Assembly: GCF_040938485.1 (NCBI RefSeq)
Contig: NW_027271853.1
Span: forward strand, 186,001-250,000
Reading direction: 5' to 3'
Source of the DNA: Diadema antillarum
Lineage: Eukaryota
Length of the DNA: 64,000 nucleotides
The translations under genes were made by a program, and so were the position numbers. A model generated the notes under the pieces. That model did no database searches. It saw only the letters and a list, made by a program, of their open reading frames with translations, and was not told where the DNA came from. Positions within the stretch are counted from its first letter, which is position 1. Each line of letters opens with the position of its first letter. Below, piece after piece: positions 2,483-52,324 of this stretch.

Positions 2483-2639
2483 TTATTCATTTGTCTCCAT
2501 CCGTAGTAACGCACGCAACTGCAGTGTGCAGTTTGTAGGCTGCTGTGAAAAAAAAAAAATCACAGGCAGCCCAAGCAGGATTCGAACCCACGACCTCTGG
2601 ATTACTAGACCAGCGTCATAACCACTAGACCACCGGAGT
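2483..2639 (-). mobile_element. tRNA-Thr(AGT)-derived SINE-like element
   Basis: Minus strand 2639-2567 has A-box TGGTCTAGTGG, anticodon arm CTGGT-CTAGTAA-TCCAG and B-box GGTTCGAATCC, with a poorly paired acceptor stem; followed by an oligo-T run inside a CTGTGA/TCACAG hairpin and a short tail ending AAATGAATAATC. Confidence 0.6.
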
Positions 2640-24966: not shown

Positions 24967-25270
24967 AACAGGGAGAAAGTGGAACATACATCTACACACT
25001 AGTTCACATGAAAATTTCACACACACTTTTCCACCAGTTGGGTGTTCAAGAAAAAAAAAAGAATTTGCTTGTAAAAGTGGCTTTCCGTGTAATGCCTGTA
25101 ATATGCAAAATAAAAGTGGAAATATGTCCAAAAAAAAAAACCTCACACACAAGCTTGAAAGTATACATAACTTTAATATAACGGACACGAATACACTTGT
25201 TTTGCCTCACTTAAGAACACTGTAATGTATGACAATTATATGTGAATATACATATATATATGAATATATA

Positions 25271-25798
25271 CACTGCAAAAAGTCCGGTGTTAAATAGTGA
25301 ACACCGAGCTGGTGTTAAATTTTCGGTGCTCATTTATGGTGTTAAATTAACACCTATGGGTGTCATTTCCAAATTTTAAACTGTTTTTTGAAGAGTTTCT
25401 TAGTAACTGCACTTCTTGTTGATTTTTAATTTAAACAAGACGATCAAGAATTTTACATTAAAATACTAGATTTTTGAAAAAATGTGAAAATAAATTTACA
25501 CCAAAGTAACACCAGCTGGTGTGGTCCCGTATTGAAGCTGGACGGGTGTTAAACCATTGATATTAACACCAGCAAATATCAAATCAACACCATGTGGTGT
25601 CATTTTTGAATTAACACCAGTACAGTGTCAAAACAACACCAGGTACAGTGTCAAATTAACACCACGAAGTGTCAGGTGAACAAATTTCAACACCATCAGA
25701 GTGCATTTTTAACACCTGTGGGTGTGGTCCCTTATTGAAGTTTGATCGGTGTTAGATTTAACACCCGTGGTGTTAAATCTAACACCGATGTTTTTACA

Positions 25799-25801
<3 letters not shown>
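25271..25801. mobile_element. 531-bp CACTG-ended non-autonomous DNA transposon (CMC/EnSpm-like), 2-bp TSD TA
   Basis: CACTGCAAAAA...TTTTTACAGTG termini, many AACACC/GGTGTT subterminal repeats, flanked by TA within a (TA)n tract. Confidence 0.85.
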
Positions 25802-25831
<30 letters not shown>

Positions 25832-25833
<2 letters not shown>

Positions 25834-26350
25834 TGTGACGGAGGAATGACTGCTCGCAGACGTTGCAGTATGTTCACTAATAGCCTTTTATTCTCCCGAG
25901 CTTTCGACCGAGTTACCAGTCTTTTTCAAGGGCTTGGGACGTAAACACAAAAGCAGAAAAGCAACCAGTTTGCATACATTTGAACAGAATAAGGCAAAAA
26001 CAAGAAAGAGAAAAGAATATCAAAAGAAAATCAAACGGAACATAGACTGCATGCATGACATTCACTACAACGAAGCGGCAATATTATCACATACACTGGC
26101 AGTGAAAATAATGGAACAGTAGTAGCAGTATAGTATAAGCAATAACAGCGGTAATTATTGCAATGAAATCATTCGAAATACATGTACATAGACCAACATA
26201 GGTTAAAACACTCTGGTTACGTTTTAAGGCGTTGGGGTATGCCTGGTGTGTGTGGTGTCAGTGGGATGAGTTTGAGGGGTTCGCAAACGTAATGTGGGGG
26301 TAGTAAAGTGTGAGGGGTGTGACTGGGAGCAGTCATTCCTTCGTCACACC
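25832..26350 (-). mobile_element. 519-bp element with 24-bp terminal inverted repeats carrying a hammerhead motif (Penelope-like derivative or MITE)
   Basis: GGTGTGACGGAGGAATGACTGCTC at 25832 versus GAGCAGTCATTCCTTCGTCACACC ending 26350 (1 mismatch); TA on both sides. Confidence 0.7.
25895..25932 (-). ncRNA. Minimal type-I hammerhead ribozyme candidate (U3-A8 core variant)
   Basis: Minus strand CCC-TTGAAAA-A-GACTGG(TAAC)TCGGTC-GAA-AGCT-C-GGG: 3-bp stem I, 6-bp stem II, palindromic stem III, CUC cleavage triplet; AATAAA 3 nt downstream. Confidence 0.65.
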
Positions 26351-36003: not shown

Positions 36004-37048
36004 ACCAAACGAGTCACATTTAAAGACAATATTTATTTTCTTTTCTGTCAGAATTAGCCAAAAGCATTTCATTTAGCATGCGCCAGACCGCATGATTTAC
36101 AGCTTGAAAATGCTAAAGCGCTGACAAGCCCCAAAATCTCACGCCCCAAAATCTCACGCCCCAAAATCTCACGCCTGCTTTTTAGCTGCATGATGCTGCT
36201 CTATGGCTTTGATATCTATGTCAGCATGAATTAATGCAATCGACAGGAAAGCTCGATGAAGTAGATTTCTTATCGGAAATACAGTATGTCCCCCCCCCCA
36301 GCAAATTTTTTTGTCTAAATGCTACTTAAGGTTCTTAGAATACAACATCTCAGCTCTATGTTGCAGAAAACCTCATTCAATTTGGTTAAGCAGTCACAGA
36401 GAAATGTGGAATGTTGTAAAGTATGTCATGAGTCTTATTCCTCCAAGTTTAGCACTTCGATACTTTTGTGTGAATACAATAGACAGAACTTGGAGGGAAA
36501 AGATTCTTGACATCCTCTACAAAGTTTCATACCCTGAATTTGTATTTGGATCAACTGACTATCGTTAAAGATATCATTGCTGAGGGTCTCGTTCTAATTT
36601 TCCTTTTCATAAACTATAAATACAAACTTCAATCCTGAGTCATTTACAGGTGTTACCTATGAAGTTGTTTTATAAATACTACATTTCTATGTAGAAGCAG
36701 TCACCAATAATTCGCTATACAATACATTACTAATACTTATGGTCACTGAATAATACCCGACAGCTAAATATTCGTTTGCACAAATGTACATAATTCAATG
36801 AAATAATGTGTTATGCATGGGATTGCAATCATTGGATGACATTAGTAATGTATAAATCAACCCTAAGAAAGTACAGGAAAAAAAATCAGTGAACAATCGG
36901 CACGAAATGTTTCTTTGAATGACCAACAAGTGAAATAAGCTGCTGAAAGCGGAAACTATGCATATCATTAAAATCATATACTAAACAGGCACAGATCCAC
37001 TTCCATCGATTTCACGTCCTAAGTTTTATTCCAAGGTATTGATATATA

Positions 37049-37099
<51 letters not shown>

Positions 37100-37130
37100 C
37101 GGGGGAGGGATGAGGGGTTATCTTAATCAG

Positions 37131-38093
37131 TTATGATATAAATGACACAAAACGGCTTCTGAGATCACTAAATGCCTCTCGAAACAATCGATCCCTGTAG
37201 CCATAGATGACCGGATTAACAACAGAATTTATGCACACACTGATGATGCCAACTTGGGCAAGAGCGGATTGATGATAGCCATTCAATTGCGATAGTTCGA
37301 TACCCATCTGTATTTCATTTGGGATACAACACACAACAAAGATGAAAACAATCATTGAAAATGTTTGCGCCGCTTTGAAATTCTTGATCATTACTTTGCG
37401 ATTACCACGATTCTTTCCAAAAGCATCGTTCACCTGAAATATAACGCGGGACTGTTTGAAAGCAATTTGTAAAATACGCGTGTTGATACCCGTCAACGTA
37501 AGGTGTAAAAGAATCATACTAACGAGCAAACTCAGATTCATGACCCACAAATTGGGGTCAGCAACGTGTTTTCCCGCCGGGCACTTAATAGTTATCACTT
37601 TTGCGTCTTTGGCCGCGAGCAAGTAAGATCGGGTTAGGAAGAACGCGCTTTGTATAATGCACGTGCATGCGAGCACGCATTGGACGCGCTTGGTAGTCAC
37701 TATGGTGGCATAGCGCAGTGGTCTAGTGATAGCGATGTAGCGATCGGCAGAGACTGCGATTATCTGGACAAAAGACACGCCGCTTAAGATCATTATTGGT
37801 GCTGTGAAGAAAATCCAAGCAAAGGAGTCACAACTTGTAGTAGTGGAGAGGTTGAAATAAAGATACAAGGGAATGCCGATCAATCCGATAAGGAAATCGG
37901 ACATAGCAAGGCTCGCAATGATGAGGTATGTTGGAGTCCGCAAATGATGGTATCTGTAAACTGCAAATACCACCAAGCCGTTTCCAACAATGTTGCCAAC
38001 TATCAGTGGCAACAAGCAAATCAAGAGCAAGGCAGTATTTAGTGGGGTAAGTACAGCGCTGTTTGCCTGTGTAGTGTCTGCTTCATCCGCCAT
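37131..38093 (-). CDS. Class A GPCR type A, unit 2 (320 aa)
   Basis: 7-TM ORF from ATG 38093 (ORF-track start 38129 is TTG); a CCG duplication near 37574-37579 adds one residue in ECL2 (KCPAGK). Confidence 0.95.
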   Translation of the reverse strand: MADEADTTQANSAVLTPLNTALLLICLLPLIVGNIVGNGLVVFAVYRYHHLRTPTYLIIASLAMSDFLIGLIGIPLYLYFNLSTTTSCDSFAWIFFTAPIMILSGVSFVQIIAVSADRYIAITRPLRYATIVTTKRVQCVLACTCIIQSAFFLTRSYLLAAKDAKVITIKCPAGKHVADPNLWVMNLSLLVSMILLHLTLTGINTRILQIAFKQSRVIFQVNDAFGKNRGNRKVMIKNFKAAQTFSMIVFIFVVCCIPNEIQMGIELSQLNGYHQSALAQVGIISVCINSVVNPVIYGYRDRLFREAFSDLRSRFVSFIS

Positions 38094-50871: not shown

Positions 50872-51212
50872 AAACAAGAAAGGGAAAACTGACCAGAAAC
50901 AAATGATAATAAACAGTGAAAACTATGAGCATAGAAAATGGGTTTTCATCGGCATTCGAGCCCGAGACCTCCGGATTACTAGACCGGTGCTCTATCCGAC
51001 TGAGGTATTGAAAGCCCTAGATCGGTGTTCGTCCCAAAACCTTAACTCTCTTTGCTCGTGTGGTCAGAAGCTATAGTGTGTGTATGTGTGCCACACACAC
51101 ACACATTAACCTCACATAGACCTAAAGGACGTAAATCAACTTTGGAATAAATGCGAGGGATCACCGAAGCGATGCAGCTTTTTATTTTTTGTAATATATC
51201 CCTTTCTTGTTT

Positions 51213-51216
<4 letters not shown>
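50872..51216. mobile_element. About 345-bp TIR-bounded element carrying a tRNA-like cassette, inserted in (TA)n
   Basis: AAACAAGAAAGGG (50872) and CCCTTTCTTGTTT (51200-51212) are perfect 13-bp inverted repeats; the paralogous site at about 37045-37097 is a plain (TA)n tract. Confidence 0.85.
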
Positions 51217-51260
<44 letters not shown>

Positions 51261-51364: not shown

Positions 51365-52324
51365 TTATGATATATATGACTCAAAACGGCTTCTGAGATC
51401 ACTAAATGCCTCTCGAAACAAACGATCCCTGTAGCCGTAGATGACCGGATTAACAACAGAATTTATGCACACACTGATGATGCCAACTTGGGCAAGAGCG
51501 GATTGATGATAGTCGTTCAACTGCGAAAGTTCGATACCCATCTGTATTTCATTGGGGATACAACACATAATAAAGATGAAAACAATCATTGAAAATGTTT
51601 GCGCCGCTTTGAAATTCTTGATCATTACTTTGCGATTACCACGATTCCTTCCAAAAGCATCGTTCACCTGAAATATAACGCGGGACTGTTTGGAAGCAAT
51701 TTGTAAAATACGCGCGTTGATACCCGTCAACGTAAGGTGTAAAAGAATCATACTAACAAGCAAACTCAGATTCATGACCCACAAATTGGAGTCAGCAACG
51801 TGTTTTCCCGGGCACTTAATAGTTATCACTTTTGCGTCTTTGGCCGCGAGCAAGTAAGATCGGGTTAGGAGGAACGCGCTTTGTATAATGCACGTGCATG
51901 CGAGCACGCATTGGACGCGCTTGGTAGTCACTATGGTGGCATAGCGCAGTGGTCTAGTGATAGCGATGTAGCGATCGGCAGAGACTGCGATTATCTGGAC
52001 AAAAGACACGCCGCTTAAGATCATTATTGGTGCTGTGAAGAAAATCCAAGCAAAGGAATCACAACTTGTAGTAGTGGAGAGGTTGAAATAAAGATAGAAG
52101 GGAATGCCGATCGATCCGATAAGGAAATCGGACATAGCAAGACTTGCAATGATGAGGTATGTTGGAGTCCGCAGACGATGGTATCTGTAAACTGCAAATA
52201 CCACTAAGCCGTTTCCAACAATGTTGCCAACTATCATTGGCAACAAGCAAATCAAGAGCAAGGCAGTATTCAGTGGGGTAACTACAGTGCTGTTTGCCTG
52301 TGTAGTGTCTACTGCATCCGCCAT
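51365..52324 (-). CDS. Class A GPCR type A, unit 3 (319 aa)
   Basis: 7-TM ORF with LRTPTY, LAMSD, DRY, KAAQT, CCIP, NPVIY. Confidence 0.95.
   Translation of the reverse strand: MADAVDTTQANSTVVTPLNTALLLICLLPMIVGNIVGNGLVVFAVYRYHRLRTPTYLIIASLAMSDFLIGSIGIPFYLYFNLSTTTSCDSFAWIFFTAPIMILSGVSFVQIIAVSADRYIAITRPLRYATIVTTKRVQCVLACTCIIQSAFLLTRSYLLAAKDAKVITIKCPGKHVADSNLWVMNLSLLVSMILLHLTLTGINARILQIASKQSRVIFQVNDAFGRNRGNRKVMIKNFKAAQTFSMIVFIFIMCCIPNEIQMGIELSQLNDYHQSALAQVGIISVCINSVVNPVIYGYRDRLFREAFSDLRSRFESYIS

What the first reader, a model, noticed from the sequence alone, without database searches (positions are those of the whole stretch)
50872..51216. TIR-bounded, (TA)n-inserted element carrying a well-folded tRNA-like Pol III cassette
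Seen: 13-bp perfect inverted termini (17 bp using the array-type left end TTTGAAACAAG), an internal tRNA-Thr(AGT)-like cloverleaf with A and B boxes and a TTTT terminator, and an internal (GT)n/(CA)n hairpin. It is inserted in a (TA)n tract that is empty in unit 2. The tRNA is internal, with no 3' tail, unlike a SINE. The same element forms the array at 41.3-43.1 kb, at a position that is (TA)n-rich in unit 1. Inference: an undescribed hybrid of a DNA-type (MITE or Helentron-associated) element and a Pol III unit that targets TA microsatellites and could seed TFIIIC sites, insulators or small RNAs among receptor genes.
Basis: partly seen in the sequence, partly recalled or inferred. Interest (0 to 1): 0.75.

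Follow-up and report, generated by a model that had tools for sequence, protein, structure and literature searches.

The report
tRNA-carrying retroelement with Penelope-style insertions
The "inverted-repeat-bounded tRNA element" is one decayed copy of a very abundant ~325-base, tRNA-derived repeat that lands in (TA)n tracts with the insertion anatomy of Penelope-like retrotransposons, so it is most likely a passenger of those elements and not a new DNA transposon.

Summary
There is a 13-nt perfect inverted repeat, (TA)n on both sides, a paralogous empty (AT)28 site, a GT/CA hairpin, and the same unit in the array at 41.4-43.1 kb. But this copy's tRNA part is decayed: Rfam gives 26.2 bits against a threshold of 29, ARAGORN makes no call, and both promoter boxes are broken. 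Only the family consensus and the array copies fold as a cloverleaf.

The family has at least 1,700 monomers. Only this locus and its duplicate contig carry that inverted repeat. Copies have variable 5' starts and two fixed 3' ends about 42 nt apart, both abutting (TA)n. Of 55 loci, 21 are partial head-to-tail tandems and 22 carry an inverted 5'-truncated partner, and 20 of those 22 are head-to-head with 3' ends outward. This is the published anatomy of Penelope-like element (PLE) insertions.

Intact RT + GIY-YIG PLEs in this genome show the same (TA)n ends, short/long end variants and head-to-head pairs (34 against 2). The "TIR" here is a 17-nt inverted mini-copy of the unit's own 3' end.

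No hammerhead ribozyme was found, no autonomous partner with a matching 3' end was found, and no RNA evidence could be obtained. Other notes of this scan had flagged similar tRNA-derived arrays and PLE fold-backs elsewhere in this genome.

The parts
50872..51199 (-). Main copy of the ~325-nt unit. It covers consensus positions 19-341 and is 95.4% identical to the family consensus. Its 3' end (..CCCTTTCTTGTTT, read on the minus strand) lies at 50872.
51200..51216 (+). Inverted 17-nt mini-copy of the unit's long 3' end (CCCTTTCTTGTTTCAAA).
   Evidence: Only L001 and L002 have it. Longer inverted partners are common at other loci.
50940..51017 (-). Decayed tRNA-like module with a Thr(AGT)-type anticodon arm. 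It has changes in the D stem, D loop and T stem, and both the A box and the B box are broken.
   Evidence: 26.2 bits, below 29; no ARAGORN call
50935..50938 (-). T4 run directly 3' of the tRNA-like module, a possible Pol III terminator.
   Evidence: read from the sequence
51067..51113 (.). Internal (GT)n/(CA)n hairpin, conserved across the family (consensus 112-141).
50854..50871 (.). (TA)n flank on the element's 3' side.
51217..51260 (.). (AT)n flank on the element's 5' side.
37042..37097 (.). Paralogous empty site: (AT)28 downstream of the sister GPCR gene, with no element.
41363..42712 (-). Left arm of the array. It holds head-to-tail monomers (consensus 163-344, then 34-344, then 34-311) and runs into the N stretch at 41230-41362. 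One monomer is split by a nested MITE at 41867-42395.
42711..43080 (+). Right arm of the array, inverted head-to-head against the left arm (consensus 124-344, then 34-166). It ends non-canonically against a Penelope-like remnant.
25802..25831 (.). (TA)15 at the place paralogous to the array, in the other duplication unit.

Best explanation
The 345-bp feature is one old copy of a short non-autonomous retroelement family. The unit is about 325 nt and 43% G+C, and the genome holds at least 1,700 monomers. The genome is an echinoderm genome of 1.75 Gb; earlier notes call it a sea urchin.

The family most likely spreads through an RNA read in the tRNA-sense direction. That RNA is probably copied into nicked (TA)n tracts by the reverse transcriptase and GIY-YIG endonuclease of Penelope-like elements (PLEs) that are intact in the same genome.

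Shown here:
- Polar structure: two fixed 3' ends and variable 5' ends.
- Integration into pre-existing (TA)n.
- Partial head-to-tail tandems.
- Head-to-head inverted 5'-truncated partners.
- An optional terminal segment of about 42 nt.
- The same geometry in the genome's own RT + GIY-YIG elements.

Inferred:
- Reverse transcription is primed by a (TA)n strand annealing to A/U-rich stretches of the RNA. Both 3' ends lie at the border of such stretches.
- Multimers arise from multimeric or circular templates or from template switching, as proposed for animal retrozymes.
- The tRNA-derived module (intact A and B boxes and a cloverleaf in the consensus) supplies Pol III transcription and/or an RNA structure needed by the master copies.

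This particular copy is 4.6% diverged from the consensus with a broken promoter, so it is probably inert.
For: - Copy number: exhaustive pattern counts give 1,724 for the tRNA 25-mer, 1,401 for a 5' 25-mer and 994 for the tail 25-mer, with zero hits for the reversed control patterns.
- Polarity: of 138 aligned copies from 55 independent loci, 89 end at consensus 341-350 and 32 end at 291-310. Starts are spread from 1 to 330, with none at 211-240.
- 3' ends: both kinds of end are followed at once by (TA)n. This holds for 15 of 15 short ends and 10 of 11 long ends inspected.
- Architecture: 21 loci are partial tandems, 22 carry an inversion and 12 are solo. Twenty of the 22 inversions are strictly minus-then-plus, that is, 3' ends outward. 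Both arms carry the 3' region, so these are inverted duplications and not L1-type twin-priming inversions.
- The 42-nt terminal segment is usually on only one arm (L076, L080, L082, L092).
- Copies within a locus are 97.7% alike, against 95.2% between loci.
- Two paralogous sites hold only (TA)n.
- Craig et al. 2021 (PMC8557442) describe this same set for PLEs: strong 5' truncation, partial tandems, an adjacent inverted 5'-truncated copy, a 30-40 bp tail often at one end, a (TA)n preference, and non-autonomous derivatives forming multicopy head-to-tail insertions.
- This genome has at least 585 GIY-YIG candidates, with open frames up to 1,031 aa. Four checked frames carry RVT_1 plus a C-terminal GIY-YIG.
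- Those PLE copies end in (TA)n, have short and long end variants (L048 against L043/L050; L044/L051 against L049), and form 34 minus-then-plus pairs against 2 plus-then-minus pairs (my count from the list).
Against: - No autonomous partner was identified. The 3' ends of five sampled PLE families show no similarity to the unit. None of 22 PLE loci holds a tRNA. A search for the tail in a foreign context found only family contexts.
- There is no hammerhead motif, which animal retrozymes and most PLEs carry.
- Three T4 runs follow the tRNA module, so Pol III alone would rarely make a full-length template.
- No RNA evidence: the public runs that hold the repeat are contigs of uncertain kind.
- Target-site duplications cannot be read inside (TA)n.
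- The 55 loci came from three differently biased samples.
Confidence: 0.6

Rival explanations
1. It is an ordinary tRNA-derived SINE, or a SINE-derived tandem repeat, mobilised by a LINE whose machinery primes on (TA)n. The inverted pieces would come from twin priming or later rearrangement.
For: - It has a tRNA-derived module with A and B boxes in the consensus.
- It shows 5' truncation with fixed 3' ends.
- A simple repeat sits at the 3' end.
- Copy number is high.
Against: - The tRNA module is not the 5' head. About 180 nt of conserved unit lie upstream of it.
- 78% of loci are tandem or inverted composites.
- Both arms of inverted pairs carry 3' ends, unlike twin priming.
- The optional 42-nt end segment and the head-to-head bias match the PLEs of this genome.
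- No LINE partner was looked for exhaustively, so this is not excluded.
Confidence: 0.17
2. It is a satellite-like DNA that spreads at the DNA level. Extrachromosomal circles or fragments would be captured during repair of breaks at fragile (TA)n tracts, with fold-back repair giving the inversions.
For: - Short tandem arrays occur at many loci.
- (TA)n tracts are break-prone and can form cruciforms (established knowledge).
- Palindromic junctions with short loops are seen, for example at L080.
Against: - Capture of circles or fragments predicts no polarity. Yet 121 of 138 copies end at two fixed positions on one strand, while the other end varies.
- Inversions are head-to-head in 20 of 22 loci.
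- RT-encoding elements of the same genome share the geometry.
Confidence: 0.1
3. One reading: a TIR-bounded DNA element (MITE or Helentron-associated) fused to a Pol III unit and moved by a transposase or Rep/helicase.
For: - This locus has a perfect 13-nt inverted repeat.
- TA-rich targets suit Tc1/mariner-type or Helitron-type insertion.
Against: - The repeat arm is absent from 112 of 114 scored matches.
- One end of the family is variable.
- Inverted partners vary from 17 to more than 170 nt.
- Neither end shows CTRR, TC or a subterminal 3' hairpin.
Confidence: 0.03

Closest known systems
Non-autonomous derivatives of Penelope-like elements: animal non-LTR retrozymes (Cervera & de la Pena 2020, PMC7229834; Li et al. 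2026 preprint, 10.64898/2026.07.22.740005) and non-autonomous Chlamys elements such as MRC1 (Craig et al. 2021, PMC8557442)
   Same: - Protein-less units of about 150-450 nt.
- Dimers to multimers, head-to-tail.
- Low G+C.
- They coexist with autonomous PLEs.
- PLE-type insertion anatomy: 5' truncation, partial tandems, inverted partner, microsatellite bias.
   Different: - No hammerhead ribozyme in the unit. It carries a tRNA-derived module instead.
- No sequence link to a PLE pseudo-LTR or 3' end was found.
- Circular RNA was not tested.
SMalpha / Sj-alpha SINE-like retroposons of Schistosoma (335 bp; Ferbeyre et al. 1998, as cited in PMC8490949)
   Same: - Unit of about 330 bp.
- Both dispersed and in tandem.
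- SINE-like.
- From my own recollection, SMalpha also has Pol III A and B boxes.
   Different: - SMalpha carries an active type I hammerhead.
- No cloverleaf-grade tRNA module or (TA)n targeting is described for it in the text I read.
TRIMp3 (Helenus, Ajax, Cassandra): non-autonomous LTR retrotransposons with a tRNA- or 5S-derived Pol III promoter (Kojima 2024, PMC10886601)
   Same: - A small-RNA-gene-derived promoter module inside a non-autonomous retroelement that is not a classical SINE.
- The module is not expected to make a working tRNA.
   Different: Those elements are LTR elements with a primer-binding site, a polypurine tract and 4-5 bp duplications. This one has no LTR features and shows PLE-type geometry.
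Classical tRNA-derived SINEs
   Same: - tRNA-derived A and B boxes.
- 5' truncation.
- Dependence on a foreign reverse transcriptase.
   Different: - The tRNA module sits at positions 200-276 of the ~325-nt unit, not at the head.
- Most loci are tandem or inverted composites.
- There are two alternative 3' ends.

Membership tests
TIR DNA transposon / MITE | The same terminal inverted repeats at both ends of most copies | tested here: not met
   Only L001 and its duplicate L002 cover the arm. Inverted partners elsewhere vary in length.
TIR DNA transposon / MITE | Both element ends fixed, with a fixed-length target duplication | tested here: not met
   5' starts are spread over the whole unit. 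Duplications cannot be read inside (TA)n.
Helitron / Helentron-associated element (HINE) | Conserved 5' and 3' termini with a subterminal 3' hairpin (Helitron: 5' TC, 3' CTRR) | tested here: not met
   The 3' ends read ..TTGTTTCAA or ..TTTTCGCCA, with no hairpin nearby. The other end is variable.
Classical SINE (LINE-dependent) | A small-RNA-derived Pol III promoter forms the 5' head | tested here: not met
   The tRNA module is at consensus 200-276. Positions 20-199 are a conserved part of the unit.
Classical SINE (LINE-dependent) | 3' end shared with a partner LINE | not tested
   The LINEs of this genome were not surveyed.
PLE-dependent non-autonomous retroelement | PLE insertion anatomy: 5' truncation, partial tandems, adjacent inverted 5'-truncated copy, optional 30-40 bp end segment, microsatellite bias | tested here: met
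   compared with PMC8557442.
PLE-dependent non-autonomous retroelement | Autonomous PLEs present in the same genome with the same target and geometry | tested here: met
PLE-dependent non-autonomous retroelement | Sequence similarity to an autonomous PLE at the 3' end or pseudo-LTR | tested here: inconclusive
   None was found in five sampled families. Most of the 585 candidates were not examined.
Animal non-LTR retrozyme | A type I hammerhead ribozyme in every monomer | tested here: not met
   No Rfam hammerhead at E<=10. No CTGANGA..GAAA core on either strand of a dimer. Rfam also missed the visible hammerhead core of PLE family A, so the motif scan is the stronger test.
Animal non-LTR retrozyme | Unit-length linear and circular RNAs | not testable with these tools
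   Only contigs of uncertain kind were available.
tRNA gene | A cloverleaf above the Rfam/ARAGORN thresholds with a paired acceptor stem | tested here: inconclusive
   Array copies score 52.4 bits and are called Thr(AGT), but 3 of 7 acceptor pairs are non-canonical. The solo copy fails.

The most novel reading that the evidence does not exclude
This would be a hammerhead-less 'retrozyme', in which a tRNA-like module has taken the place of the ribozyme in a PLE-dependent short element. The module would drive Pol III transcription and/or recruit RNase P/Z or another tRNA-handling enzyme to shape unit-length (possibly circular) RNA. That RNA would then be copied in rolling fashion from a (TA)n primer. 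It would be the first tRNA-headed partner family of Penelope-like elements, a 'SINE of PLEs'.
Probability: 0.18. Interest if true: 0.75.

Novelty: new variant of a known kind. Interest (0 to 1): 0.5.

Why it matters
If PLE dependence holds, this family shows that Penelope-like elements can support an abundant short passenger built around a tRNA-derived module and not around a hammerhead. That would widen the known ways short elements exploit retrotransposon machinery: SINEs on LINEs, TRIMp3 on LTR elements, retrozymes on PLEs.

It would also give a tractable system, with thousands of young copies and clear junctions, for studying why PLE integration produces tandem and inverted copies and prefers (TA)n.

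For annotation, it warns that TIR-like ends and 'tRNA gene clusters' in this genome are by-products of this insertion mode. For the receptor cluster itself, this copy is most likely inert.

Tried and rejected
- Helitron/Helentron reading: rejected, because one end is variable and the termini do not fit.
- Hammerhead search: Rfam on the array and on the solo copy at E<=10, plus a core-motif scan on both strands of a dimer. Nothing was found.
- Autonomous partner search, all negative:
  - blastn and nhmmer of the unit against 22 PLE loci. The only hit was a 15-nt CA-rich match, which I judged to be low complexity.
  - Inspection of PLE 3' ends.
  - tRNA scan of the PLE loci.
- RNase Z-type 5' end: tested whether upstream partial copies start at the tRNA 3' end. 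Starts cluster broadly at consensus 261-279, with no single site, so I make no claim.
- Extra conservation of the tRNA module: only slightly higher identity once sampling bias is removed. This is weak.
- Expression: the one run search and the one read-laying run gave only contigs of uncertain RNA/DNA kind.
- The N stretch at 41230-41362 was left as it is, so the left end of the array is unknown.
- No literature on tRNA-bearing PLE passengers was found in the held library. Dfam and Repbase could not be consulted.

Full report
THE OBSERVATION

- A 13-nt perfect inverted repeat (50872-50884 and 51200-51212; 17 nt if the CAAA at 51213-51216 is counted).
- (TA)n directly on both sides.
- A GT/CA hairpin at 51067-51113.
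- A tRNA-like stretch on the minus strand (50940-51017), followed by a T4 run.

The flanks align to a paralogous GPCR gene copy. There, only (AT)28 (37042-37097) lies between the matching left flank (36605-37067, 82.6%) and right flank (37125-37566, 96.4%). So an empty (TA)n site exists.

The same unit builds the array at 41363-43080. The paralogous place in the other duplication unit holds (TA)15 at 25802-25831.

The one overstatement concerns the tRNA in this copy:
- ARAGORN does not call it.
- Rfam gives 26.2 bits against a gathering score of 29.
- It does not fold as a cloverleaf, and both promoter boxes are mutated.
- The array copies score 52.4 bits. The family consensus folds as a cloverleaf with intact A and B boxes, though with a poorly paired acceptor stem in the standard register.

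THE FAMILY

The window belongs to a 1.75-Gb assembly. Run metadata point to an echinoderm. Earlier notes of this scan call it a sea urchin (Diadema antillarum), which I did not check.

Exhaustive pattern counts, with reversed-pattern controls at zero, give:
- 1,724 hits for a 25-mer of the tRNA part.
- 1,401 hits for a 25-mer near the 5' end.
- 994 hits for a 25-mer of the last 30 nt.

A consensus of 26 monomers gives a unit of about 325 nt and 43% G+C. The tRNA-like module lies at consensus 200-276. The solo copy is 95.4% identical to the consensus.

L002 is collinear with the window locus over 3.3 kb at 97-98%, so it is a haplotig or a very recent duplicate. The TIR is therefore a feature of one locus.

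POLARITY AND ENDS

Copies are described here in the tRNA-sense direction. I aligned 138 copies from 55 independent loci:
- 89 end at consensus 341-350 (..CCCTTTCTTGTTTCAA).
- 32 end at 291-310 (..AAAGTTTTCGCYA).
- Starts are spread over the unit, with clusters at 261-279, 302-310 and 111-120, and none at 211-240.

Both kinds of 3' end are followed at once by (TA)n. A (TA)>=4 run lies within 46 nt of 42 of 55 left and 47 of 55 right boundaries, against 1.0% of random 46-nt windows in this window.

Fixed 3' ends with variable 5' ends point to a reverse-transcribed RNA read in the tRNA-sense direction. The paralogous sites that hold only (TA)n show that the microsatellite is a target and not only a tail.

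COMPOSITE INSERTIONS

The 55 loci fall into three classes:
- 12 hold a single copy.
- 21 are head-to-tail partial tandems: a 5'-truncated copy followed by full monomers.
- 22 include an inverted partner.

In 20 of those 22, the order is minus then plus. The two arms meet at their truncated 5' ends and point their 3' ends outward.

Both arms contain the 3' region, so these are inverted duplications. L1-type twin priming instead inverts a different, upstream part of the RNA.

The 42 nt between the short and long ends are often present on one arm only (for example L076, L080, L082, L092). Copies within a locus are more alike (median 97.7%) than copies from different loci (95.2%), as expected if a composite arises from one event.

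The window shows both forms:
- The array is three minus-strand monomers meeting a plus-strand arm at 42711/42712.
- The solo copy is the minimal case: a 17-nt inverted copy of the 3' end (51200-51216) placed against the 5' side of a near-full copy (50872-51199).

COMPARISON WITH PENELOPE-LIKE ELEMENTS

Craig et al. 2021 (PMC8557442) describe PLE insertions as:
- strongly 5'-truncated;
- organised in partial tandems (pseudo-LTRs);
- often with an inverted 5'-truncated copy immediately adjacent, so that inverted repeats flank the unit;
- carrying a 30-40-bp extension, often at one end only;
- showing (TA)n as a preferred target (stated for Naiads);
- accompanied by non-autonomous derivatives that form multicopy head-to-tail insertions.

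This genome carries many such elements. A GIY-YIG search gave 585 candidates, with open frames up to 1,031 aa. Four frames I checked have RVT_1 plus a C-terminal GIY-YIG.

Their copies behave like the tRNA unit:
- They end in (TA)n.
- Family A has a short end (L048) and a long end about 60 nt further on (L043, L050). Family B has a short end (L044, L051) and a long end 33 nt further on (L049).
- In the list, I count 34 neighbouring minus-then-plus pairs against 2 plus-then-minus pairs.

The tRNA unit thus shares target, end behaviour and composite geometry with the RT-encoding PLEs of its own genome. This is the basis for my best explanation.

WHAT IS MISSING

- I found no autonomous partner with a matching 3' end.
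- The unit has no hammerhead core on either strand and no Rfam hammerhead hit. It therefore fails the defining feature of animal retrozymes. Rfam also missed the visible hammerhead core in PLE family A, so the motif scan carries more weight than Rfam here.
- Three T4 runs follow the tRNA module, so Pol III alone would seldom make a full-length template. The role of the module (promoter, processing signal or RT-recognised structure) remains an inference.
- Starts of upstream partial copies cluster near the T arm and the tRNA 3' end, but not at one site. I make no claim of RNase Z processing.
- The tRNA module is only slightly better conserved than its surroundings once sampling bias is removed.
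- Public runs that hold the repeat are stored as contigs of uncertain kind, so expression is untested.

RIVALS

- A LINE-dependent SINE remains possible. It fits poorly because the tRNA module is internal, most loci are composites and there are two alternative ends.
- DNA-level capture at fragile (TA)n does not predict the strict polarity.
- The DNA-transposon reading (MITE or Helentron) fails on conserved termini.

KNOWN RELATIVES IN KIND

- Animal non-LTR retrozymes: monomers of about 300 bp, in dimers to multimers, with PLEs as the proposed mobilisers and a target-primed circular RNA proposed as template for tandem cDNA (PMC7229834; 2026 preprint).
- Non-autonomous Chlamys elements.
- The 335-bp SMalpha SINE-like element with a hammerhead (cited in PMC8490949).
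- TRIMp3 elements, in which a tRNA- or 5S-derived Pol III promoter sits inside non-autonomous LTR elements (PMC10886601).

I found no paper in the held library describing a tRNA-bearing, hammerhead-less PLE passenger. Dfam and Repbase could not be consulted.

VERDICT

The proposed class is wrong. The element is best read as a new variant of a known kind: a PLE-type short retroelement built around a tRNA-derived module. Interest is moderate, because the partner and the RNA are not yet shown.

Other notes of this scan had already flagged tRNA-derived arrays, PLE fold-backs and hammerheads around (TA)n elsewhere in this genome. They gave me the lead to PLEs, and I tested that lead here independently.

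Noticed in passing
window 41867-42395 and 25270-25801: A ~530-bp MITE is nested in one monomer of the array. Its inverted ends are CACTGCAAAAAGTCCGGTGTTAAA.. and its target duplication is TA. A near-identical copy sits in the paralogous unit, but there it lies directly in a TA-rich tract without the array. How the same MITE came to lie at paralogous places in two different contexts (local hop, conversion or loss of the array) is unexplained. Related GGTGTTAAAT..AACACC repeats occur at about 34842 and 63281.
   Followed up: partly
window 25832-25990 (minus strand) and 43081-43140: This looks like a 5'-truncated remnant of a Penelope-like 3' end with a CGAAAGCTCGG hammerhead-like segment. It ends at the (TA)15 in unit 1. 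In unit 2 the array abuts it, and about 60 nt plus the (TA)n are missing. It overlaps another note of this scan (minimal hammerhead at 25895-25932).
   Followed up: partly
window 2565-2639 (minus strand): A separate tRNA-Thr(AGT) call (Rfam 44.8 bits), followed by a long T run. It shares the anticodon arm, variable region and T arm with the repeat's tRNA-like module, but its D arm differs, so the module looks chimeric.
   Followed up: partly
window 5571-61888: A cluster of about ten intronless open frames of roughly 290-355 aa on the minus strand. The two I scanned are rhodopsin-type GPCRs (7tm_1, E about 1e-29 to 1e-30). The solo element lies about 150 nt downstream of the stop of the gene at 51365-52324.
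   Followed up: partly
window 41230-41362: A stretch of N lies directly left of the array, so the array's left boundary and its flank are unknown.
   Followed up: no
L043 (G000:C753:449000-458500), L044, L049: Apparently intact Penelope-like elements: open frames of 1,031 and 961-962 aa with RT plus a C-terminal GIY-YIG. They occur in tandem with a 3,864-nt period. Family A has a visible hammerhead core (CTGATGA..GAAA) about 130 nt before its long 3' end, which Rfam did not report at E<=0.01.
   Followed up: partly
L016/L017, L018/L019, L020/L022, L025/L026, L076/L084, L080/L081: Pairs of loci on different contigs share both the repeat array and its unique flanks. This suggests many uncollapsed haplotigs or recent segmental duplications in this assembly.
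   Followed up: no
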